64,000 bases of DNA. Source: Lytechinus pictus (Eukaryota). The notes beneath the pieces are model-generated. The model saw only the letters and a program-made list of their open reading frames with translations. It was not told where the DNA came from and made no database searches. The position numbers and the translations under genes are program-made. The stretch is taken from the NCBI RefSeq assembly GCF_037042905.1, contig NW_026974141.1, forward strand, positions 10,540,001 through 10,604,000. Direction: 5' to 3'. This document shows, piece by piece, positions 32,655-49,511 of this stretch (positions within the stretch are counted from its first letter, which is position 1; each line of letters opens with the position of its first letter).

Positions 32655-33188
32655 ATTAGCCTTTACACCAGACCTTTCCGTTGCTCAAAAGCATTTGGAG
32701 ACGTTTTGTGGGCTAGAAATAATAGTTTTCAACCATTTTCGGTCCGGATTTCGGGAAATTATGAAAATATGAATATTCCAAATGCAAAATTATGGAACGC
32801 TTCACAATCTTGTGTTCCATGAAGGATAATATTAGCCTACAAACCAGACCTTTTCAATGCCAAAAAATGCATTTGAAGTTGAAGACGTTTTGGGGGATAA
32901 AAATGTTAGTTTTTAACCTTTTTCGGTCCGGATTTCGGGTAATTATGAAAATATGAATATTCAAAATGCAAAATTATGGAACGCTTCAAGATCTTGCATA
33001 TCATAAATATTGATATTAGCGTTTCTATCAGACCCTTTCAATGCAAAAATAATTTGGAGACACTTTTCGGGCTAAAAATGTTAGTTTTTAACCTTTTTTG
33101 GCCCGGTTTTCGGGAAATTATGAAAATATAATTATTCAAAAATGCAAAAATATGGAACGCTTCACGATTTTGCGTGTCATCCTTGCGC
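32655..33188 (-). repeat. Three tandem ~180-bp units, each containing the U6 3' end plus its downstream flank
   Basis: Units start with ATTAGC at 32655, 32831 and 33015. AAAA(T/A)TATGGAACGCTTCA occurs at 32786, 32970 and 33146. Confidence 0.88.
33146..33188 (-). ncRNA. U6: U6 snRNA, 3' part (nt ~65-107)
   Basis: Reverse complement reads GCGCAAGGATGACACGCAAAATCGTGAAGCGTTCCATATTTTT. Confidence 0.95.
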
Positions 33189-33224
33189 CTGCTACATCTC
33201 AATCTTTTTCATTTTTATTGGAGC

Positions 33225-33444
33225 CTGCAGCCAATGACGTTGCCCCGTTTGCCAACAAAAGGAACAACATATGGGCCAGCCGACCAATCAAAGGCGTCCA
33301 TTCGGCATCTTTCCGTCCGAATCGTCTGCCATAGATCACGTCATAGATCACGTGTCACCACTACTTCAAATTGCTTTCTGACGAAGATCTCTCGAACTTC
33401 GAACGAAAGTTTTTGCCGACCTTCTTCTGCAATCAATTTGACAG
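33225..33444 (+). promoter_or_regulatory. Candidate transposase promoter and non-coding first exon
   Basis: CpG-richer patch with CCAAT boxes (~33231, ~33284), a duplicated CATAGATCACGT with an E-box, and a possible donor GACAG|GTAATT at ~33443. Confidence 0.35.
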
Positions 33445-33920
33445 GTAATTTTACCTTTTCTCATGCCAATATTAGTGTTGAATGCTGATATGATTGTTAC
33501 TGCAGAAATTCTGATAACTCTTGTTATGTTTTGATGTGCCATTAAGTGAAAAATTGGATGAAAAATATGACGAGTTTGTCGCGGTTTGTCAGTTGGAGTG
33601 CACTGACGAGTGATAGCTATTGTTTTTCACGTGTATTACAATGGTCGATTTTCACGCGTGTGTGGTGATGAATTGAACTGGTTTGAACTCTGATTGAATT
33701 ATTGATTAGTTAATACCTATACTAGTAACGGTCTGTGGAGCCTAATCCAAATCCGGTGATTAAGTATTGAGTGTTGTGATGTATTAATATCTACCCGAGA
33801 TCATTATTTGTGTCAAAGGCGTGTGTAGGGGATTGTCTTTATTTAGCTTGACTGTGTCTGTGACTTGTGAGAATTGACTTGAGTTTGATCTACTCTCAAC
33901 TTCAAGTATCATACCTCTGG

Positions 33921-34065
33921 CTACCTCAAGGCCAAGTGATGTTCGTGCAGGATCCACTCCACTTCTCTACCGCTACACTACGCTAGGTGGAGCGTAGACG
34001 TATGTAGCGGTAGTGAAGTGGAGTGGAGCCTGCACGAACATCGCTTGAGCCCGAAGTTGAGGTAG
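33921..34065. mobile_element. Hairpin MITE inside the Dada element
   Basis: Near-palindromic CTACCTCAA...TTGAGGTAG; CCTCTGG duplicated at 33914-33920 and 34066-34072. Confidence 0.7.
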
Positions 34066-35335
34066 CCTCTGGCTAACGTCAGTCTTGATGCCTGATGGTG
34101 GGGGAGGTGTTGACTTAACCACCGTGGAGCACTTAACAACATATTTAGGTGGTACGGGGATGGGCCGCTTTGAATGACCCCCCCTTTTCAGTTCTCTAGA
34201 CTAGATGCTTCATGACAGAATTCTATTTAGATGCCGCCCAGCCCCGGTCGCAAGACCCCCATTAGGCCTTACGAAACATGTCAATGCCCAGACCTAGCCC
34301 TGCCAAAATTGTCCAGTGAGAGCTGCATGCTCGCCTTCTCAACCCACTCCGCTTAGCACCGTAAGCGCCCATACATGCACAGCAAGTGTGCACCGTACCC
34401 CCTGTACCGCGATCCCGTTCCGTCACGCTGCCTGGAATAGAGTAGATAGATCTATATTTAGTTCCCAAGACCGTGTATTTTACTCTTGTCAGTTCCTCAG
34501 GGTGTTGTGAGGCATCCACACCCCCATCTAAACATAATTTTAGTGCCCACCCCCCCCCCCCCCTCCCCATTGGATTTAATTTACAAGATCAAAGTTTAAA
34601 AACTCATTCAATGAAGAAGGTTGTGATTTTCTGTTAACTAGGACTCCTTGTGTGGGAAATGAAGTGGGTAATGTTTGCTTGATTGTTTTTTGCATACTGC
34701 AGTTTGCAGTACAACTAGATATATCATCATTTAACTTTGCTCTGAAATAAATTGAATTATTTCAAAAAAAAATTGTAATGAATTAAAAATTGTAATTGTT
34801 GACTAATACCAGTTATGAAAGTGTTACATCACACTTATTGATATATTGTATGTCCATGTGCAATTAATTCCTTTAAAGAAGTGGAAATTTCATAAAAATT
34901 AGATGTAAATAAAGTTATGACATTTAATATTTTTGCTTAGTATCACAAAACAGTAAATATGCACAGCCTGATCGGTATGGAAATGAGGGGGAGTGATGAC
35001 TTCATGAATTTACTTTTTATTTTGCTTGTAAATACATGAAATATGAAATTTATCCATTTTAATTTTGAAATGAAGTTTTATTCCTCCTGAGCATGTGAAA
35101 TTAACATTGTTTTAATATTTGTTGGTTCAGCAAAGTTAGATGTGGCCTGTGATTCCTGCTAATAATTGTTTTTGTATGTTTTTCTCTTTCTTTACCTCTG
35201 CAGCAATCTCCATAGACATTTGGCGGCCATCTATTTGTTATCTGTTTCGTAGTCAGTCTTTGTTTTGTCTTTCTTGTGTCTCTGTGTGTGTTAGTACTTT
35301 TGTTCTTTTCAGGTCTTTGAAGGAGGGAGGAAGAC

Positions 35336-38300
35336 ATGTTCGAGCCAGCGTTCTTCTACAAAGGCAACATCCTGAGGTTGGGGGATTCAGATAGAGCCAG
35401 AGCCTTCACCAGACCAGAGGGATTCAAGGTACGCCCAGCTGTAGAAGTTGAGAAGGAGGCCAAGAGGGAGGTCCAACGCCTTGGTGGAGACCCAAGTCAT
35501 CGTGTGTCTGTGCTGGCCTTCTCCAGAGTGCAGTTTGGCAAGTACCCAGGACAGACCTTCAAGTGGCTGGTGGAGAATGCCCTGGGATGGTGTGCCGAGT
35601 TGATGTGGAACATGGAGCGGACTGGGGAGAAGTTGGACCCAAAGAGAGACCAGTCCGTCAACAAGTTTGCCCTTAAGGAGTACATCACAGCATTTCCTGA
35701 AGGGTGTGCCGCTGTTGAGATGAAGAGGAAGAAGGGGAAGCGTCAGACAGCAGGATGCAGCCAGAGTGAGAGTGGACGACCTCCAAAGACTGGATCCATG
35801 AAAGATCAAGGTAAGTCATTTTTTATTTAAATTTAATTAAATTTATATTAGAATTTTGAATAAACGGAAATGGGGTGCAAAGAATTTGTATGTTCGTTAG
35901 AGATGTGTAGGAATCCTTTTTATTGAAGTTTATTTTAAAGGTAAAATTATAGTAGATGCTGCAAACAGTTATTTCATGAGAGAGTCTTTGAAAATAACCT
36001 GTATATACTGGTCGGTCTGAAATAGCCCAGTTAAGATAGGGTTAATGTTAATTGCCACAATATTATCATAGATCTACATGTAATAAATTTAAAGTAACTT
36101 TGTGAAATCATGAAATCTTATCTCAAAACCAATAATTCTAACGATCAGTAGTGAGAAGAATGTATATGCGGCACAGTGTATTGATAATGTTTTTAAAATG
36201 CCCAACATATTTTATTTAACTCTGCTTATTTTGCTAATTTATCACCAATGACACATTTTTTTTCCATTAGCTATTAAATGTCATTTTAAGATTGCAACCA
36301 CAAGTGGTGTTTATAGCGTTAATAAATAGAATGATTGTTCATGAATAGAAATTGTTAATAAATATAATTTAATTGTTAATTGCAGTGATGCCACTTATTA
36401 TAGCAAGCTCTCTGACAATTAAGTCATTGGTGATAACTTTCATAAAACATTCCTTGGGATATTTATGACCAAATAGCATAAATATTGACAGTGAATGAAT
36501 ATTAAAATATTAGGTTGATATCAATATGAACTTTATACTTCCCCCAATAGGTGAGGGACAAGTTTTCGATGATGACCTCACTGATGCTCAGTTGATTGAA
36601 GCATTTCTACAACGTTCCTCCTTAGATTCTGCAGGTGCGTATTGTATTATAAGTTAACACATAATGTAAATTTTGTATTGGTCTTTCTTGAAATGGCTTT
36701 GCTAAAAAAAAAACCTACTTGTAATTGAAAAGAGGAGAGGAATGCGAGAGAGCAATAGAGGAGGTGTATAAAATGGAAGAAAGAGAGGAATTTGAGTAAT
36801 GTAAAAAACAAAAACAAAGTAAATATATTAAAGCATAAAAAAAAGGAATTCATTAAAAATTCCATCAAAGCTAAAATGTAGAACATACTCTTCATTCAGT
36901 GTTTTTATATTGTAATGTGTTAACAGGAAATGTGAATGCTCATATTATTTCACTGATCACTTTTTTGTATTTTTAAGAATTTGAATATCCCTCTCCTCTA
37001 ATAATCAATGTTTTGTTTTGTTTTTTCCTTTTAGAAGCCACTACATCAAGAAAAGTGACTTCAACATGCAAGAGAGCAGTAGCAGATGACGGAGATAAGA
37101 CAGGTAAATGTGGTTCATTTTTTCTTTTCTGGACATTTAACTTATGGGACAAGAAATATGTACTGCAACCAATCTAATAAAGTCCAACACTAGATATAAT
37201 TTTTTGTTAGTGTGCACTACACGTGTGGTTATTGAGAATACCTTGAAAGCATTGAAATAAATACATATGTTTCTTTATAGTAGAGACTGTCTTCCCTTGC
37301 ACCTGCCATTTAAGATTGAACTTTTTTGCACGATTAGTGTGAACAATGATTGGATGACACCTACATAGAGAAGAAGTAGCTTGATAATGTAATAACTGTA
37401 ACATTACTTGTACATTATTAGAAGACAAATATTGTTTTCCTTATTTTATTTGCCTTTATTCTCCTGATTTCATTTTTCAATGTACCAGCATGTTACATTA
37501 TTATGATGTGACTTGAATCTCTTTCAAAGATTAATATATCTGTATATTCGTCTAAATTATCTTTGTACTTTTTTTTCCAGAGTACCTCCTGACCGAAGGG
37601 TGGAAGCAGACACTACCACGTCAGGATCATCAGTGGGTTTCACGTGCTTTGTTCAAGGTGTCAGCCCGTGGGAAGCCTGAGTTTGACATGCAGAAGATCA
37701 ACACACTTTGGTTCTTCCCACCTTTACCACAGTTCGCTCAAGGCCAAGCTCCAAAGCCAGCACGTTACTTTGCGACCAAACTGCTGATGTGGATGCCTCG
37801 CAAGCTTTGGGGATTGAAGATTCTTTGTCCCAACAAAGAATGCAACGGTCAGGAGCTGTTATCAGCCGGTGTCTACTCCCATGTGCGACAGGTCATGGAC
37901 ATTGATGGATTCTACAACATGGGTGCTGAGTACCTGGAATGCAGAAAGTGTCACAAGAAGTTCATCAGTTGGAGCAAGCCCATCTTAGACCAACTGGACA
38001 CCAGTCACCGGCTGTCATTCCCGGTCTTGCTCACATACAGGTTAGTGAATATCTTGTCAATATCCAAAGAATATTCCTTTATTTCTTGTTTATGTATAGC
38101 TTTTGCATTGCTTTATTATTATAACACAATTCATATGTCATTGTATTTCTGTTAATTTATTTCTTAAACTTATTGTTTTCAAACTATTTAATTAATTAAC
38201 GTCATTGACTTATTATTATCATTATCTTGTATTTCCCAACTTTGCTTACCTAATTTGTAATATGAAAATACTTTACACTTTACATTTCCTTTCTTGTTTG

Positions 38301-41300
38301 TTAAATGATTAATTATGTTAATGTATGCTATTTGTCAAGCGCTTAGATACATCATGTTAAGCGCAATATAAATACAATTTTAATTATTAATACTTTACTT
38401 CATTGCACCCTATACTGCTATAATGCGATATTTCAAAACCATATGACAGACATATGACAGTGATATACTGATTCCTAAATTTCTTCTTTTTGCTACAGAG
38501 GTGCTTGTGACAGGAAAATCATCGGGATGATGCGGGACAGGACACTTGGCAACGGACCATTCCAGATGATCCGCAAGCTCAAAGAGGTCCACACCGATGC
38601 TTGGCTTGCAAAGACTGCCCAGTATTGTTCTGTGGTTGAGGAGTTCGTCAATGCCAGTGAAAGGGGCCTCATCAATCGACCAAACTGCCCACCACCGCCC
38701 GCAATGTCTTCTCTTCCCACGTATCGTTGGCTCCTGACGGTGTACTGCAACGACGTGCTGGAGCGCATCGATGAAGTGAAGGCTAGCATCACATCTACAT
38801 TCGGCCGTATCCTCAAGATGGACTCGACCAAGAAGGTGAACATGAATGTGCTATTCATTTGATGTAATATCATCTTGTGTAACAAAATGGTTAACTTAAA
38901 AAATTCAAGAAAATGGGTGATGAACGTTTGATTACAATCAACCACTTTTAAGCATCTAATTCTTTTATTGTTGCTTGTGTGGTTTAAGTGGTGACTGACA
39001 GCAAAAACATTACACTTTAAGGACTTTCAATTAAGACTTTGATTAATAATTGTAATCTCATTCCTGTTTGTTTATCAATGTTTCTTTACTTCCTTCATTT
39101 CTCTGTATAATATAAATGTGTATGATTGTATAAGATACTTGAAATTCATTCCATTTCTGAAATTTATCTTTTCATCACAGATCACAAGGAAACTGAGAGG
39201 CGAGTCAGCAGGGACTGCTGCTTGGGCATCCAACGTCGGCAACGAGTACGGACAAGTACTGATGTCCGTGATGACTGTTGGCGAGGGAGCCGGTCTCTAC
39301 GAGATGATCAAGGGCATCCAGAGACGGTATGCAGCAGCCGGCCAACCTAGACCAGAGCTTCTGTACGTGGACAGAGGCTGCTGTGGTGCGGAATCCAGGA
39401 TCTTCAGGGGGTGGCCAGACATGCCTGTCCGACTTGACGTCTGGCACTTCATGAGGAGGCTTGCTAGAGGATGCACCAGCACTGAGCACCAACTCTACCC
39501 GTTCTTTCTGAGACGGTTGTCAGCCTGCATCTTTGCATGGAGCGCAGACGACCTGAATCAACTCATCGCCGCAAAGAGAGGTGAACTCAGGGACCAATGC
39601 ATCGCTGAAACTTCTGATGAGGTCATCCTGAAGCACCTTGGAAAGAGCTCGATCGCACGACACTGCAGACGAGTGACCAGAGGAACGGAGGAGACTACCC
39701 AACTCATCGGAGATCTCTTGGCTTCCTTGGATGGCGAGGGAGGACATGACACACTCGGTGTTCCCCTCTTTGACTCCGACAGAGTGTGGGAGATTTGGGA
39801 CTCACAGCAGAAACACATCGCATGCCTACAAGATCCACCAGATGTCCAGCTCTACACCAAGATAGGAGAGTCAGTGAAAGGTGGCATCACATTGCCTGTG
39901 TACAGATGTGCTAGAGGGTCAACATCGCTGGAGTCCTTCCATCTTCACATGAACCGGTTCATCCCTGGTAAGTTCATGTCTTATATCACTTAAAGTGTTG
40001 TAAAACAAGTGTTATAAAATCTGTCAATGTAAGATCATGCTGATTCTTCACCATCATGTCACTATTTGGAGCATCTTTATTTCTACAGGTTTCTGTCTAC
40101 ATTCCTTTTGTGTATTGCAATGGATACATTTCATAATACATTCGAAATACTTTGTTCATTTCATTTTTCAGGGACATCAGCCAACAATGTCCACTTCCAG
40201 GCCTACCTTCTTGAGGGGGTACATCGATGGAACTGCGATCGTGCAAGGGATGCTGAAGCTGCCACTGCGCCTTCTCACGCATCATATGGCACCTACAATG
40301 AGTACGATGTCAACCGGTTGACCGAGAAGCTGTTCGGACTTAAGATCAACCCTACTCTGACTGCACCCCAGAAACACACAGGTATGCCAATGCCTTTTCT
40401 ATTGTAGTCCATTCATATATGACTCCTAATGGTCTATGAGTTATGTCAATATAAAATGCATTGAACTGATGAAATGAATTATTTTGTTATCTCAATTTTA
40501 ATTCCATTTATTCAAAATTTATCTAGATCTGTATTCCTTTCTTTCTGTCAATTTATTTGTTACAGGGGAGCTTATCGGCCTGGAATATCTCTTCAACCAG
40601 ACCAACGAGGAGCTACTTCCCATGCATCCTGATGAAGGGGAGGTAGAAGATGATGATGGCGAGGACGTAGGACGTCGGGAAGAAGAGGACGTAAAGGACC
40701 CGACTGAGCCACCCCCGGAGTTTGGAGTAAGCCCTGCTTCATCCCGACGTGCCTCGAGAGTGTCAAGCCAGCAATCAGTACCACAGCACGTTAGCAGTGA
40801 GTATTTCCTATATTTTCAACGACTTTTCTTTGATTGTATTTTCAGGGAGTCATTACTACGAGCTTTACTTCAACAATTTATTCCATGACAATTGGGAACT
40901 TACACTGCTGCTCAGATGTTGTTGCAGTCCAAACACATGCTGTATCTTTTACTTTTTTATTTCTTTGTAAGACATTGTACCATTTTTGGATCAATGTATT
41001 CTTCATTGCTAAATTAAATAACAATTCGATATACCTGCAAAAACACAATAATAAATCTTCCGAGTGACTTCCCAACATTAGAAAATATTTCTATTTCTTC
41101 TATCTCATTTTACCTACAGCAACACCACAGAAACACAGATCACAGAGATCATCACTGCCGGTTCCATCCACCAGATGCAGACCCCACACATCCAAGGCAC
41201 CGGCAACAGTATCACGTGCTCCAGATTCACCACCACCAACTTCAATTCACAGAACATCCACAGCACCAGCAACTGTCTCCCGGGCACCCGATTCTCCAAG

Positions 41301-43562
41301 GGATGACACACCGGATGGTGGACCACTTGCTGGAGATGAAGAAGTGAAGGATGTCGAAGATGTGGATCTTAGAGAAGAGTCCGACGTAAGAGAAATAATT
41401 TGTATTTTTATAATGCTTATTTCATTCATTTATTTATTATAATAAATGAATAAAATGAAATAAGTATGAATGATTCATTTTAAGTGTCCATGGGAAAAAA
41501 TAATACATGTTATTGATGGCTTCATTCAGAACAAGTTGGCCTGAATAATTAATTTATTTTAAGATGTTATCTTTTTTCTTGTCTTACATACAAAGCTTGC
41601 ATTTAAAAATATTATTTATTTCACTTTTTTTGATTTGATGTTCCTGTTATAATCACTAGTCATTTTATAAATGGATGGCTATAGAAAATGACATATAGAT
41701 TGTAGTCACACTGTTTATCAATGTGCAATTCTCTTTTGTTAATCCCATCATATGCATTGTCCTCTTTATTGTAATTTTACTTTTACAGGAGGAGCACACA
41801 GGTCGCAGACCAGGTTACGACCGTGTGCAAGCACTGGGGAACTACCTCCTCAAACTCAGAGGTGACGAACATCTGATGAGCTCCAGGGACTCCAAACAGA
41901 TCGTGAAACTTTGGAGCGAATTGGATCCATACGACCAACAAGTGAGACGCCCGGCCCGTCACCAAGAGAAGCTCACCAAAGGACGCTTCAAAGCCAGAGG
42001 AACATCTCCAGTTGTCCCAGGCATAGAGAGTACTCAAAGGTATGTACATTCAACTCTATTAATTTTTCTGGGTGATTTATCATGATGCAATCATGAGCAG
42101 CCTTCTTGTCTACTTTGCAAAGATATAGAATAAAAAAGAAGTATCTCAACTCGCCGATATTGATTTCATTCATCACATTCCAGTTCTTCGTTTATATCAA
42201 TCACCTTATTACTTTCACTTACAGCAATACAACCAGCAGTTGAAGTGTGCTGTACACGATTTCTTGATGTATTTTTCTATCATTGTATATTTTTTCCTCC
42301 CCTCGTACAGATGCTTTCTTGGAAGTAACTCAGGACCCGCCTCCGTACCCAACGCCAACAGGGTTATGGAGTATGTCATCGGTCAGCTCTGCAGCTACTA
42401 CCCAGAGCACCAGAGGCACAAAGGGAGAGTCATTCCCAGGTGGACCACTATCATCCATGACTACAAGAACATTCGAAGCAGGGTCCTGGCCTCCACCCAC
42501 ATAACATCCAACACCCGCCTACAATTGTTAGATATCAATCGATATGTCCTCATTCAATGGTAAGAATATTGTAAAATGAGTTAAATTTCGAGCACTTGGA
42601 AATTTCTTTTATTGAATTGAATTGATTTCTTTTACATACTTTGGAACATACAGATAATTAATATGGTATATCAATCATACCTGAATTAAATAATACAGCA
42701 ATTTGAAATCAAAGACAATTTAAAATATAATGAATTAGATGGAATCATTGAAAGCAATTCAATGGCATCACAATTTTATTTGTAACAATTTATCTGTGTT
42801 ATTACAAAGTATTTCAAATGTAGCAATAGATCGTATCTTTAGCAATATCTATCTCCCTATGAAATACAGCCTGTCTAATGGCATTTTTCTTTCTCTTCCT
42901 TTTCTTATTTCATGTACAGGCATAACCGAAGATCTAAAGAAGAGGAGAGGAGTGCATTGGAGATGGGAGCTTCGGCACCTAGACCTAGCATGACTGCCCA
43001 CCAATCTGTCCCACCACCAAAGGAGAAACCACATGCCTTGCCACCACCTCCCATCCAAAGGCCCTACCAGTTCCCGATGGTTTCCAACACAGTTGGTCAG
43101 GCAAAGATGAGAGCACCAATAGCACAACCAACATTTGTTCTGGTTCCTGTTCCTGTAATGGCCGTACCATCAACCCCTGTGTCCACCCCTGCCCCAACTA
43201 CAGTCTCTGTCCCTGGATTCCGGTCCATCCAGCCTACACCTCCAACCTGGCGGCCCAGTGTACCACAGCCGAGTCTACCACCACCTTCATCACTCCCGAA
43301 GTCCACCCATTACAACAGGAAGCGCAGAGCACAGCAACGACTCGAAGGACAGGTTTCTACCAAGGTTTACAAGGCCCGGAAAGGTCCGATTGTATGCAGC
43401 CAGTGTCATCAACCAAGGGATCGAGAGACTCACACTCAATATTATGGCAGCTGGTATTGCGAGACATCCCAGAACCAACCCTTGGCTGAATGGAAGGCGA
43501 TGATGTCAGAACGGCGACTAGCAAAGCTGAAAGCTGACAAGGAGGAAGCCAAGAAGGACTAG
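35336..43562 (+). CDS. Dada DDE transposase, 12 coding exons, ~1353 aa
   Basis: Exons with GT-AG boundaries and consistent phases: 35336-35810, 36551-36634, 37035-37103, 37581-38040, 38499-38835, 39181-39967, 40172-40381, 40566-40796, 41120-41385, 41789-42039, 42311-42559, 42920-43562 (4062 nt). Motifs: CPxxxC..ECRKC, KMDSTKK, YVDRGCC, RLDVWHF (DxxH), RGSTSLESFH and a C-terminal CxxC..H..C. Confidence 0.88.
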
Positions 43563-44665
43563 TGCAGTGAATAATATGTTTATCAAGACGGCAGAAGTCG
43601 GGTCGCCGGCGACTAAACTGGCGCCACCTACTGGAAGCTATGCCAGTAGGGAGGGGGATTAAGACCTCCTGCAGGATGAAAAACAAGACCTGTTAAAGTG
43701 GATCATTGCACCAGTCAGGCACAAGCAACATCGTATCTATGGATTTAGGACACACTAATGAGAAACCAGAGGAATGAGAAAAATGGAATGAAGATTGCTA
43801 ACCTTCAAGGAGAGAGGAAACAGTATAGGTAGAAAGAGGAGATTGTGGGCAGCTTCATATGAAAAAGGGTCAAACATTCATTGAGAAATAAGGACAGGTT
43901 TTAAAACAACAGTGAAAGACCATCTGGAAGATATAGAACATATTACAAAAATTGTTAGATGACAACAGCGGCAGCAGAATAGTGAGGAATCATTGCAGAA
44001 ATTTTCAAATTCAATACAACTACGAAAGCAGATGGGATATTTCAGCAGTTTTCGAGAAAAGCTACAATCTGATAGAAACTCATTTTCACCGCCACAAAGT
44101 ACCCCGAGGAGCTCTGGTTCTTGCAATCATTGAGCATCTCGAGTGGTGACTCAAGTTATATCGACATTCACGACGTCTCAGTGCTATAGTACGATATCCA
44201 TGATGGATAAGCATTGAGGACTTAGTGGAATGTGCAACAGAATTTAGTAACAATGAAACATGTTAAGAAAAATAAATGTTGGATGTTATACAACAAAGTA
44301 CTGTACCTTAGACAAGCAACTCCTAAGGTGACTATTTTTTCCGATCGTTCACGGGTATCCTTGTGAAGCTCCATATTTAATATGTTGAGCATCATTTGCG
44401 ATGACTTTGTGGAGCGGTCTCTTAAAACTAGTGTGATAATGTCAACTAGTTTGGTTTTTAATGCTGCCAAGACATTAACCAACTTTCTTCAAACTGCCAT
44501 TCAAATTTGTTGAAAATTGGTTGATGTTTTGAAGGTCCCAAGCCCTTGTCAAAAGCAGAGGGAAAACCAAGTAATGCTTCTTGAAAAATCCCAGGAGAGG
44601 AAAAGACGTAGGAAAAGAGAGAGATTAAAAATGATGGGGGAGGGATTTACAACCTTTCGGCACTC

Positions 44666-45100
44666 GCATCCTTCTTGTATAAATGTGACTTAATACCTTT
44701 TTCCACACTCATAAATGGGATTTACTACCTTTTAGCACTCGCACTCACAAATCTTAATGACTTCTTGAAAATAATTATTTTTAAAAATGTGACTTGCTTC
44801 CTTTTGGTATAAATGTGACTTAATACCTTTTTCCACACTCGTAAATGGGATTTACTATCTTTTAGCACTCACACTCAAAAATCTTAATGACTTCTTGAAA
44901 ATTATTATTTTTAAAAATGTGACTTGCTTCCTTTTGGTATAAATGTGACTTAATACCTTTTTCCACACTCGTAAATGGGATTTACTACCTTTTAGCACTC
45001 ACACTCAAAAATCTTAATGACTTCTTGAAAATTATTATTTTTAAAAATGTGACTTGCATCCTTCTTGTATAAATGTGACTTAATACCTTTTTCCACACTT
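44666..45100 (+). repeat. 130-bp tandem repeat, ~3.3 copies, in the Dada 3' region
   Basis: Units start at 44666, 44796, 44926 and 45056. Confidence 0.9.
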
Positions 45101-46104
45101 ACAACTACATATATATATATATATATTATATATCATTTTTTTTTTTTTATTCATGACTAAACTACAACAAATCTTTTGAAAGGTTTATTATTTATTCCCT
45201 GGGGAAGGAGAAATAGGAAAGAAACTTTTGCTTCAATTATAAATTAATAAAGAAGGCATTAATGAATAAAAAAATGAATGAGTAAATGAATTAATGAATG
45301 AGTCAAGGAATGAATGAAAGAAATAATAANNNNNNNNNNNNNNNNNNNNNNNNNNNNNNNNNNNNNNNNNNNNNNNNNNNNNNNNNNNNNNNNNNNNNNN
45401 NNNNNNNNNNNNNNNNNNNNNNNNNNNNNNNNNNNNNNNNNNNNNNNNNNNNNNNNNNNNNNNNNNNNNNNNNNNNNNNNNNNNNNNAAATGAAGGATCT
45501 TTCTCTCATTCTATTTCTTTTTCATTACTTTATCCCCCCTAACCCCCCCCCCCCCCTCTCTCTCTCTAATCAATAAATTTGAAAAGACAAGATATATCTT
45601 TCCTTCCATTCTTTCATTTTCTATTTATTTATTTATTTATTTATCTATCTAATATTCTTCTTATTTATCTATTTATTCATCTAATATCTATCTATACATA
45701 CATATCTTTGTTTATCTATATCTTTGTTTATCTATTAATTATTCTGTCTATCTACCCCCCCCCCCCCTCTCTCTCTTTCAGAAGTGAAAAATACAATGAA
45801 CACAAACATAAATGCAAAATACATTCATTTCATTTCAAACAAACTGCATTTATTAAAAAATCAACCGTCATTACATTACAATAAAAATCGTGCCTAAAAT
45901 GTCATTATTTACTTTCTTTTTCCCCCTCTCCGGCGTTCCATACGCCCGAACCCGACCGATTTGTTTTCAAACAAGGCTCCATTTCCCACGCCAGCGATGG
46001 CTCCGCCCCCCTTCTATGGCAGACGATCTGCCCAAAAATCCACAAAACAGCGCCGGCGTGGGGGCCTATGGGACGCGGGGACAGAGAAGATTAGTCGGTA
46101 GCTT

Positions 46105-46117
46105 TTGCGCAGGGGCC

Positions 46118-46149
<32 letters not shown>

Positions 46150-46174
46150 ATAGATGTGTTGCCGAAGCGAACAC
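46105..46174 (-). ncRNA. U6: U6 snRNA, 5' part (nt 1-70)
   Basis: Reverse complement reads GTGTTCGCTTCGGCAACACATCTATTAAAATTGGAACGATACAGAGAAGATTAGCATGGCCCCTGCGCAA. Joined to the 3' part with one TSD removed, it gives 107 nt. Confidence 0.96.
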
Positions 46175-46199
46175 GACTATGTCAGGAAACCTCTCTCAA

Positions 46200-46257
46200 T
46201 TTAAACTAGAGCACATGTATTTCAAACTCTACACAGTTAGCGCGCCAGCACCACGTG
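46200..46257 (-). promoter_or_regulatory. U6 type-3 Pol III promoter: TATA-like box, candidate PSE and E-box
   Basis: TTTAAA at -26 to -31, candidate PSE around -52 to -69, and CACGTG at -78 to -83. This matches the TATA-like + PSE + USF E-box layout known for sea urchin U6. Confidence 0.75.
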
Positions 46258-47189
46258 TACCCGTAGAATAGCGACGCTCCGGCGGGATATAATAGGTACT
46301 ATTGACCGACTGATCATAATAACAACTGGAAGGTATAATAGATTTGTCACGTGACCAGAGCTCCCACCAATAGGAGCCAAGCACAAGCCTTTATGCAAAT
46401 CGATTATATGGAACCGAGCCACCGACGCACACCGATGCTCGTAATGTGTGATCAAAGTCCACAGGAAGCTTTCCATTTGTAATAATATCAGAGAATAATA
46501 ACAAGCAAACGTCTATGGCGCTCTTGATCTCTTTGTTGACTGCAACGTTGACAAAGTACAAACGGGAATCGTTGTGATTGAAGTAGACCCATGAAGATAT
46601 TTGCTGATAGACGGTGCACCGTAGACATCTGTGATACCGAGGGTTATATGAATATTCCTTTACTCTCCGGTGGTCTAGTTCTCAGTAACCCTAGTCCTAG
46701 TCTGAAAGAGATTAGAAAAAAAAACATATCTATAACATAAAATGACAAGCCACATGTATGCATGGAAACGTATATTACTCATTGTGTATTGACATACATG
46801 TAAGTCTAATTTTGCAAAGGAACATTAAAGTTTAAGACAGAGTAACCATAACACACAGATGGGGGAAGAAAGTATACGGAATGAGATTGCGGAGGTTAAG
46901 TTTAATAGTGTATGAGAAAACGAAGTGAAGGTTAAGTACTAAGTAAAGCAGAGTAAAATACATAGTGAGCATAATAGAAAAAGGGATATGAATATACATA
47001 TACATATATATATATATATAAGAGAGATATAAGTACATAGGGATGTGAGCATATACAGGAAAGAGAAATTAATATAATTATATAGGAAAGGGGGCTATAG
47101 TAAACATCAGCCTATACCGATATGAGAGAAATGGGAAAAAGAAAATGGATCGAAAATAACAGAGAAAGTAGGGTGAACATAATTAAAAG

Positions 47190-49260: not shown

Positions 49261-49419
49261 AGGCCATGCTAAAGCCCCTTTCACAATTGCTAGTGCGACT
49301 TGCTACAACCGTTGCGATTCTGTGCAACATAATATTGTGACCAAACGATCGTACGAGCAATTGTGAAAGCCCCTTAATCTTCTCTGTATCGCGGCTCCAA
49401 TTTTAATATATGTGTTGTC
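49261..49419 (-). pseudogene. U6: Truncated U6 retro-fragment (nt ~12-62), split by a 102-bp MITE
   Basis: GGCCATGCTAA [MITE] TAATCTTCTCTGTATCG..CCAATTTTAATATATGTGTTG; flanked by GCATCCAGTC(GT/AC)AGG direct repeats at 49246-49260 and 49420-49434. Confidence 0.75.
49273..49374. mobile_element. Small Harbinger-like MITE with TAA TSD; related copy at ~49093-49205
   Basis: CTTTCACAATTG...CAATTGTGAAAG inverted ends; TAA at 49270-49272 and 49375-49377. Confidence 0.75.
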
Positions 49420-49511
49420 GCATCCAGTCACAGGACTGGTCTCTGTAGGTCACTAGCGCACGAGTCGTGGAAGTGTTTCACGACCTCCAGCCGACTAGGT
49501 GCGACTTCTTA

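What the first reader, a model, noticed from the sequence alone, without database searches (positions are those of the whole stretch)
46081..46134. Transposon end mirrors its target: 14-bp inverted repeat symmetric about the TSD
Seen: ACAGAGAAGATTAG (element) - 10 bp - TTGCGC - 10 bp - CTAATCTTCTCTGT (U6). The left end has only a degenerate equivalent at the same 10-bp offset (TCAATCTTTTTCAT, 33199-33212). Known: short subterminal repeats shared with the target have been noted for Dada. Inference: one DNA-binding specificity recognises both the element end and the invariant U6 ACAGAGA box, so the host cannot escape by mutating the target.
Basis: partly seen in the sequence, partly recalled or inferred. 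Interest (0 to 1): 0.72.

Follow-up and report, generated by a model that had tools for sequence, protein, structure and literature searches.

The report
Dada-U6 transposon end mirroring U6
The 14-letter mirror repeat is real, but it is the published sub-terminal repeat that U6-targeting Dada transposons share with their target gene, seen here in a reportedly sea-urchin genome; it probably helps the transposase find U6, and nobody has tested that.

Summary
ACAGAGAAGATTAG (46081-46094) and its reverse complement in U6 (46121-46134) lie 10 bp either side of the 6-bp duplication TTGCGC.

It is already published. Kojima & Jurka 2013 (PMC3706591) described a 9-bp sub-terminal repeat, CAGAGAAGA/TCTTCTCTG, in all Dada-U6 families. 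[quoted passage not shown]

- The box is 14/14 in five copies of this genome, including copies only about 80% identical.
- It sits at the same offset in 11 fish consensus ends.
- In 17 distinct U6 junctions from metagenomes, retrieved without reference to the box, 12 match it at 11/14 or better.

Three qualifications:
- The mirrored core is 12 bp. Letters 11-12 match only in this lineage.
- The far end keeps only ATCTTC at that offset, so a shared specificity would read GAAGAT, not ACAGAGA.
- The box-bearing end abuts the U6 5' half whichever way the transposase gene points.

"The host cannot escape" is not supported. This assembly holds variant U6 genes with the same box and spacer but a changed insertion site, and none is occupied. 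Binding itself remains inferred. This scan also noted the same stretch under s1-306778 and s1-306856.

The parts
33146..33188 (-). U6 snRNA 3' part (from the duplicated GCGCAA to the T-run terminator)
   Evidence: Read directly. Identical to the 3' part of the intact U6 at C18:14849201.
33183..33188 (.). Left copy of the 6-bp target site duplication, TTGCGC (GCGCAA in U6 sense)
   Evidence: Same TSD as published for Dada-U6.
33189..46104 (+). Dada-U6 DNA transposon, 12,916 bp, with a multi-exon transposase on the + strand (antisense to U6)
   Evidence: Bounded by the two U6 halves and the TSD. Exons hit PF20499 and share the YVDRGCC, RLDVWHF and CARGSTSLE-S-FHLH motifs with Dada-U6 transposases of Kojima 2013 Dataset S1. 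Two further ~98% copies exist in the genome.
33189..33198 (+). Distal (left) end, 10-bp terminal spacer CTGCTACATC
   Evidence: Shares GCTAC at positions 3-7 with the other end (read by eye).
33199..33212 (+). Distal-end sub-terminal box TCAATCTTTTTCAT (8/14 to the U6 box; core AATCTT)
   Evidence: Identical in three copies and in the ~86-88% copy L010. Fish left ends keep [A/T]TCTTC at the same offset.
33321..33335 (+). Second sub-terminal inverted repeat, left arm ATCGTCTGCCATAGA
   Evidence: 15-bp exact inverted match to 46013-46027. The right arm is conserved in the diverged copies.
46013..46027 (+). Second sub-terminal inverted repeat, right arm TCTATGGCAGACGAT
46081..46094 (+). Proximal (right) end sub-terminal box ACAGAGAAGATTAG, 14/14 identical to U6
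   Evidence: Conserved 14/14 in L004 and L005.
46095..46104 (+). Proximal-end 10-bp terminal spacer TCGGTAGCTT
46105..46110 (.). Right copy of the TSD, TTGCGC
46105..46174 (-). U6 snRNA 5' part (model positions 1-68), with upstream promoter-like elements (CACGTG near -80, TATA-like near -28) at 46175-46260
   Evidence: Rfam RF00026, 70.6 bits. Upstream sequence. Reading the motifs as promoter elements rests on my own knowledge of sea-urchin U6 promoters.
46121..46134 (-). U6 ACAGAGAAGAUUAG segment, 10 bp from the TSD, mirror of the proximal box

Best explanation
The repeat is the junction between a Dada-U6 cut-and-paste transposon and the U6 snRNA gene it has split. Its outer arm is the U6 ACAGAGAAGAUUAG segment. 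Its inner arm is the element's U6-proximal sub-terminal repeat. On each arm the box lies 10 bp from a strand-transfer point, and the two points are separated by the 6-bp staggered cut. The symmetry about the duplication follows from that geometry.

Shown:
- The element belongs to the Dada-U6 lineage.
- The box and its 10-bp offset are conserved across copies, fish families and environmental eukaryotes, while the spacer is not.
- The far end keeps only the GAAGAT core at the same offset.
- The box-bearing end always abuts the U6 5' half.

Inferred: a sequence-specific DNA-binding part of the transposase, probably the N-terminal CCCC zinc-finger/DUF6729 region, binds the box and places the catalytic site about 10 bp away. 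The U6 5' arm has the same layout (box, 10 bp, ...CT, scissile bond) and so is recognised as a pseudo-end. This would fix both the site and the orientation of insertion. The sequence at the cut (CT|GCGCAA) is probably also read.
For: Identity of the element: U6 is split at model position 68 with TSD GCGCAA. Transposase motifs are shared with Dada-U6_DR. CCCC and CCHC cysteine patterns are present.

Conservation within this genome: the proximal box is 14/14 in five copies, two of them about 80% identical in the flanking terminal region.

Conservation in fish consensus 3' ends: the GAAGA core lies 14 nt from the terminus in 11/11, and ACAGAGAAGA is intact in 7/11.

Unbiased metagenome junction survey: 12 of 17 distinct junctions have at least 11/14 identity at offset 11-24. 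Across the 17 junctions plus the window's own, positions 13-24 match U6 in 12-18 of 18, against 1-7 of 18 for positions 4-12 and mostly 1-5 of 18 beyond position 24 (up to 11/18 at positions 27-28). Eight of these contigs encode Dada transposase homologues.

Distal ends keep [A/T]TCTTC at the same offset in 11 of 14 families read. Only a DNA-level role explains that.

Kojima 2022 independently concludes from target comparisons that the protein binds mainly on this side of the insertion site.
Against: There are no binding, footprint or integration data for any Dada transposase.

The proximal end is far better conserved than the distal end, which a simple 'same site at both ends' model does not predict.

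One metagenome family has the box 14 bp rather than 10 bp from the terminus (L071 group).

U6 variant genes with the same box and spacer are unoccupied, so the box cannot be the whole recognition signal.

A crude search found no comparable mirror in tRNA-targeting Dada lineages.
Confidence: 0.6

Rival explanations
1. RNA-level role. The intact upstream U6 promoter transcribes the U6 5' part into the proximal end, and the end's complement of ACAGAGAAGAUUAG folds back on the U6 box. That would make the truncated U6 inert. Selection for low host cost, not DNA binding, would then keep the proximal repeat long and exact.
For: The minimum-free-energy fold of the 135-nt chimeric RNA contains the full 14-bp stem (-42.1 kcal/mol, z = -3.1). 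A T4 run lies 58 nt into the element. This explains why only the U6-proximal end keeps the ACAGA part, and why that end abuts the U6 5' half whatever the transposase orientation.
Against: It does not explain the conserved ATCTTC core at the same offset on the distal end. It does not explain the fixed 10-bp distance from the terminus. Across 15 families the first T4 run lies 46-208 nt in, not clearly earlier than I would roughly expect from base composition (my own estimate, not computed). Cod families with a mutated box would pair poorly. Dada-U1 shows the same arrangement at both ends. No expression data were available.
Confidence: 0.2
2. Historical relic. An ancestor captured a piece of U6 at one end, for example by aberrant or one-ended transposition or by gene conversion, and the repeat has no present function.
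For: The match in the urchin is to U6 itself and is perfect. Dada copies flanked by non-U6 DNA on one side exist, so irregular events do occur.
Against: The box is inverted relative to the adjacent U6, so it is not read-through capture. It stays conserved across vertebrate, Daphnia-like and urchin lineages while the adjacent 10-bp spacer and the inner flank have diverged to chance level. In two old copies it survives within the longest invariant block near the terminus, though other terminal blocks are conserved too.
Confidence: 0.07
3. A chance palindrome with no meaning.
For: None beyond the small size of the repeat.
Against: A perfect 14-mer at a fixed mirrored offset is not expected in 64 kb; searching with up to 2 mismatches gave 4 matches against 0.75 expected, and only these two are exact. 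The repeat recurs in every copy and in unrelated genomes.
Confidence: 0.01

Closest known systems
Dada-U6 families (Dada-U6_DR, _DPu, _CT, _CGi and others), Kojima & Jurka 2013, PMC3706591; Kojima 2022, PMC8869645
   Same: Same insertion site in U6 (nt 65-70) and same TSD GCGCAA. The transposase is homologous and is antisense to U6 as in most families. There are no long terminal inverted repeats. [quoted passage not shown]
   Different: The host is reportedly a sea urchin (other agents' notes, unchecked). The two papers list Dada-U6 from chordates, an arthropod, a mollusc and an annelid. The element is 12.9 kb, longer than the published range of 4.7-11.0 kb. The proximal match to U6 is 14 bp. 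The distal box departs from the published 9-mer (TCTTTTTCA, 6/9).
Dada-U1A/B_DR (Kojima & Jurka 2013)
   Same: [quoted passage not shown]
   Different: Different target gene and box. Not examined here.
Bacterial insertion sequences that insert next to sequences resembling their own inverted repeats (IS30, IS911/IS3 family; recalled from my own knowledge, not tested here)
   Same: The transposase's end-binding specificity doubles as its target specificity, so the target looks like a transposon end.
   Different: They are prokaryotic and belong to different transposase families. Their targets are other copies' ends or IR-like hot spots, not a conserved host RNA gene. The resemblance is an analogy only.
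P element and hAT target preferences (cited in Kojima & Jurka 2013 discussion)
   Same: These are related DDE transposases with long TSDs and an extended target motif that includes the TSD.
   Different: Their target motifs are weak and degenerate and are not copies of the element's own sub-terminal repeats.

Membership tests
Dada superfamily, Dada-U6 lineage | Insertion inside U6 snRNA genes between positions 1-70 and 65-end, with 6-bp TSD GCGCAA/GCGAAA | tested here: met
   U6 model positions 1-68 end at 46105. The 3' part resumes at 33188. TTGCGC is present on both sides.
Dada superfamily, Dada-U6 lineage | Transposase homologous to Dada transposases, with the DDE region and the DxxH motif | tested here: met
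   Exon 39118-39993 carries LLYVDRGCC, VRLDVWHFMRR and VYRCARGSTSLESFHLH. The same strings occur in the Dada-U6 rows of Kojima 2013 Dataset S1. The catalytic E was not located. No profile-based comparison was run.
Dada superfamily, Dada-U6 lineage | N-terminal CCCC and C-terminal CCHC zinc-finger motifs | tested here: met
   By inspection only: C-x4-C ... C-x2-C in exon 37649-38155 (inside PF20499), and C-x2-C-x8-H-x8-C in exon 42912-43562. The spacing is within one or two residues of the published pattern.
Dada superfamily, Dada-U6 lineage | No terminal inverted repeats; 9-bp sub-terminal repeat CAGAGAAGA at the U6-proximal end, same distance from the TSD as in U6 | tested here: met
   46081-46094 contains CAGAGAAGA exactly, 10+ bp from the terminus and mirrored at 46121-46134.
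Dada superfamily, Dada-U6 lineage | Matching 9-bp repeat TCTTCTCTG at the other end | tested here: inconclusive
   The same offset holds TCTTTTTCA (6/9), conserved in four copies. Most fish consensus left ends also keep only TCTTC, so the published 'shared among all families' holds only for the core.
Dada superfamily, Dada-U6 lineage | Multi-exon transposase gene encoded opposite to U6 (all published families except Capitella) | tested here: met
   All coding pieces lie on the + strand and U6 on the - strand.
Transposons whose end-binding specificity is also their target specificity (IS30-like behaviour) | The transposase demonstrably binds both its own end and the target sequence | not testable with these tools
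   This needs protein-DNA binding assays. Only sequence mimicry and its conservation are shown.

The most novel reading that the evidence does not exclude
The U6 5' arm is a true pseudo-end. One transposase domain reads a 12-bp box and cuts or joins about 10 bp away, on element ends and on U6 alike. The exact-box end is always paired with the U6 box across the 6-bp stagger, which sets insertion orientation independently of the transposase gene's direction. The host has answered with U6 gene variants that keep the catalytic ACAGAGA box but alter the stem-loop sequence at the cut. If so, Dada targeting would be modular (box plus spacer plus cut site) and re-targetable by swapping the box in end and protein.
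Probability: 0.3. Interest if true: 0.6.

Novelty: already known. Interest (0 to 1): 0.3.

Why it matters
Dada elements are the only DNA transposons known to integrate at one precise site in multicopy RNA genes, and they have been proposed as safe-site gene-delivery vectors. How they find the site is unknown. The end/target mimicry is the only concrete clue and was already published in 2013, so this finding adds an instance and not a principle.

This follow-up adds four modest things:
- an unbiased survey showing that the mirrored core is 12 bp with a fixed 10-bp offset in many unrelated hosts;
- a general asymmetry between the two ends;
- independence of that asymmetry from transposase gene orientation;
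- a genome in which few canonical U6 genes were found, most of them occupied, while variant U6 genes with a changed cut site are free.

Together these give clear substrates for a binding and integration experiment.

Tried and rejected
1. Other Dada lineages of this genome were fetched: 60%, 54% and 41% protein identity, at C18:14.10M, C12:13.75M and C17/C45. Their termini and targets could not be found in the 10-kb pieces obtained. Rfam and tRNA scans gave only two intact 5S genes near the C17 copy.

2. The end of the 88% copy at C18:14.80M could not be located.

There were no hits at element ends. This null is weak, because the tRNA words came from memory and had to match exactly.

4. An early Pol III terminator as a conserved feature of the proximal end is not supported.

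5. Reading occupancy as '3 of 4 canonical U6 genes hit independently' was rejected. The two C21 copies share at least 1.5 kb of flank and are a segmental duplication. The C7 copy shares only the U6 unit. That leaves at least two independent events.

I did not try another route.

7. The large protein searches were not run. The family was settled by motif comparison with the published alignment.

8. The single-nucleotide spacing in Figure S2 of the 2013 paper could not be trusted, because the stored PDF text is garbled.

Full report
**What is in the sequence**

- On the + strand, 46081-46094 reads ACAGAGAAGATTAG. It is followed by 10 nt (TCGGTAGCTT), TTGCGC (46105-46110), 10 nt (AGGGGCCATG) and CTAATCTTCTCTGT (46121-46134).
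- The repeat finder reports a 14-nt arm pair, 100% complementary, 26 nt apart.
- The 14-mer has no other perfect match in the window.
- Rfam places U6 model positions 1-68 at 46174..46105 on the minus strand (70.6 bits).
- The rest of U6, from GCGCAA to the T-run, is at 33146-33188 on the minus strand.
- The element therefore runs from 33189 to 46104 (12,916 bp), with TTGCGC duplicated at 33183-33188 and 46105-46110.
It is also 10 nt from the terminus and matches the U6 box at 8 of 14 positions.

**What the element is**

- All long coding pieces lie on the + strand, antisense to U6. Two of them hit PF20499.
- The 291-aa exon at 39118-39993 contains LLYVDRGCC, VRLDVWHFMRR and CARGSTSLESFHLH. 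The same strings occur in the Dada-U6 rows of the protein alignment deposited with Kojima & Jurka 2013.
- A C-x4-C...C-x2-C pattern and a C-x2-C...H...C pattern correspond to the two zinc fingers those authors describe.
- Insertion site, TSD and gene orientation equal those of published Dada-U6.
- Other agents' notes call the genome the sea urchin Lytechinus pictus; I did not check this. An E-box near -80 and a TATA-like box near -28 upstream of the split U6 fit what I recall of sea-urchin U6 promoters.

**It is already published**

[quoted passage not shown] They speculate that the repeats serve target recognition, and they report the same arrangement for Dada-U1. The 2022 follow-up does not discuss the repeats. 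From target comparisons it concludes that the protein binds mainly on the side of the insertion site that holds the U6 box. I found no functional study of Dada targeting.

**Conservation within this genome**

- There are three ~98%-identical full copies: the window's, C21:5.36M and C7:27.79M. There are also one ~85% copy and fragments.
- The proximal box is 14/14 in all of them. That includes two old copies whose terminal regions are 81% and 79% identical and which are no longer flanked by U6.
- The 'degenerate' distal box is identical in all three young copies and in the ~86-88% copy. It is therefore a conserved variant, not decay.
- The two C21 copies share at least 1.5 kb of flank and are a segmental duplication. 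The C7 copy shares only the U6 unit.

**Conservation in other species**

- Fish: in 11 consensus 3' ends from Kojima 2022 Dataset S1, the GAAGA core lies exactly 14 nt from the terminus in all 11, and ACAGAGAAGA is intact in seven.
- Left ends: the same dataset, Daphnia, one complete Daphnia-like metagenome element and the urchin keep [A/T]TCTTC at offset 14-19 in 11 of 14. The TCTGT part survives in only three.
- Unbiased sample: I scanned metagenome contigs for the U6 5' half plus GCG[C/A]AA followed by A, a pattern that says nothing about the element's box.
  - The scan returned 43 contigs. After removing intact U6 variants and short inserts, 17 distinct junction sequences remained.
  - 12 of the 17 have at least 11/14 identity to the U6 box at offset 11-24.
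  - Per position, across these 17 plus the window's own junction, 13-24 match the mirrored U6 arm in 12-18 of 18. Positions 4-12 match in 1-7 of 18, and positions beyond 24 mostly at chance.
  - Eight of these contigs encode homologues of the urchin transposase exons (27-48% identity), so they are Dada elements.
- One family has the box 14 bp rather than 10 bp from the terminus (L071 group).
- The conserved mirror is therefore 12 bp (AATCTTCTCTGT). The urchin's 14 bp adds two positions that match U6 in only 4 and 7 of the 18 junctions.

**Asymmetry and orientation**

- The end next to the U6 5' half carries the long exact box. The other end keeps only the GAAGAT core.
- In contigs L075, L076, L084, L088 and L098 the transposase is antisense to U6, as here.
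- In L077, L079 and L109 it is in the U6 sense. Even so, the first 22 nt of their U6-proximal end are almost identical to those of the antisense L088/L098 family. Kojima & Jurka noted the same reversal for Capitella.
- The identity of the proximal end thus goes with the target, not with the gene.

**Mechanism**

- Shown: on the strand that ends in a 3' OH, both element ends read box, 10 nt, terminus. The U6 5' arm reads box, 10 nt (...CCCCT), scissile bond. The cuts are staggered by 6 bp, so the proximal end and the U6 arm necessarily form a palindrome about the TSD.
- Inferred: a DNA-binding part of the transposase reads the box and sets the catalytic site 10 bp away on ends and target alike, so that U6 is taken as a pseudo-end. 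The sequence at the cut is also read.
- The main rival is an RNA role. The U6 promoter is intact, the chimeric transcript folds with the full 14-bp stem, and this would explain the extra conservation of the proximal end. It does not explain the distal core or the fixed offset, and an early terminator is not conserved.

**The 'no escape' claim**

- Only four copies of the canonical U6 core exist in the assembly. One is intact and three are occupied.
- A second U6 type (95.6 bits to RF00026) occurs three times, with T-run terminators and shared upstream motifs, plus one retrocopy. It has the same box and 10-bp spacer but CCCCT-TGCACA-AAGATG at the insertion site. None of these is occupied.
- The numbers are small and arrays may be collapsed in the assembly. 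As far as it goes, the pattern suggests the box alone does not suffice and that the host's U6 can vary at the cut site.

**Verdict**

The phenomenon is already known. The urchin element itself is a new member of the family.

Noticed in passing
G000 C2:21564484, C2:21576121, C6:16101906 (L017-L019); retrocopy C16:14319947 (L020): A second U6 gene type has a different 5' stem-loop and CCCCT-TGCACA-AAGATG instead of CCCCT-GCGCAA-GGATG at the Dada insertion site. The ACAGAGAAGATTAG box is identical. The three genes have T-run terminators and shared upstream motifs. None carries a Dada insertion.
   Followed up: partly
G000 whole assembly: The canonical U6 core occurs only four times in 811 Mb, and three of these are split by Dada. 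The one intact copy (C18:14849201) has a different upstream region without the CACGTG box. Orphan canonical U6 3' halves at C5:346391 and C4:2989231 have no 5' half nearby.
   Followed up: partly
window 33321-33335 and 46013-46027: A second, longer sub-terminal inverted repeat (15 bp exact, ATCGTCTGCCATAGA). It starts 133 nt from the left terminus and 78 nt from the right terminus, and is conserved in diverged copies. It could be a further transposase-binding or promoter element.
   Followed up: partly
window 49374-49420 (minus strand): A U6 5' fragment (about positions 15-52, including ACAGAGAAGATTAA) that then diverges, 3.2 kb from the split U6 on the same strand. It is below the Rfam threshold.
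   Followed up: no
L061 (G000 C18:14830000-14839999): A tandem array of at least five ~1.1-1.3-kb units. Each carries ~300 bp that is ~80% identical to the Dada 5' region 33280-33581 but lacks the terminus. It lies about 10 kb from the only intact canonical U6 and about 30 kb from an 88% Dada copy.
   Followed up: no
window 44660-45330: Internal tandem repeats of about 130 bp in the 3' non-coding part of the element. BLAST hits are offset by multiples of 130, and copy number appears to vary between copies.
   Followed up: no
L059 (G000 C17:20579000-20588999): Two intact 5S rRNA genes lie about 4-4.7 kb from a distant Dada-like coding region (41% identity). This may be a Dada lineage associated with 5S genes, as described in fish. 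No split 5S gene was seen.
   Followed up: no
L073/L108 and L085 (metagenome contigs): U6 genes carry a short insert (37 and 24 nt) exactly after GCGCAA, then resume with GGATGACAC. These could be U6 introns or transposon footprints in unknown eukaryotes.
   Followed up: no
L071, L093, L094, L096, L100 (metagenome contigs): A Dada-U6 family whose box lies 14 nt rather than 10 nt from the terminus. It is otherwise close to L075, which has the usual 10 nt.
   Followed up: no
L004 (G000 C7:27836056) and L010 (C7:27850696): This old ~85% copy has non-U6 DNA at the proximal end and TTGCGC plus a possibly decayed U6 remnant at the distal end. It resembles the one-sided flanks that Kojima & Jurka ascribe to one-ended transposition.
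   Followed up: no
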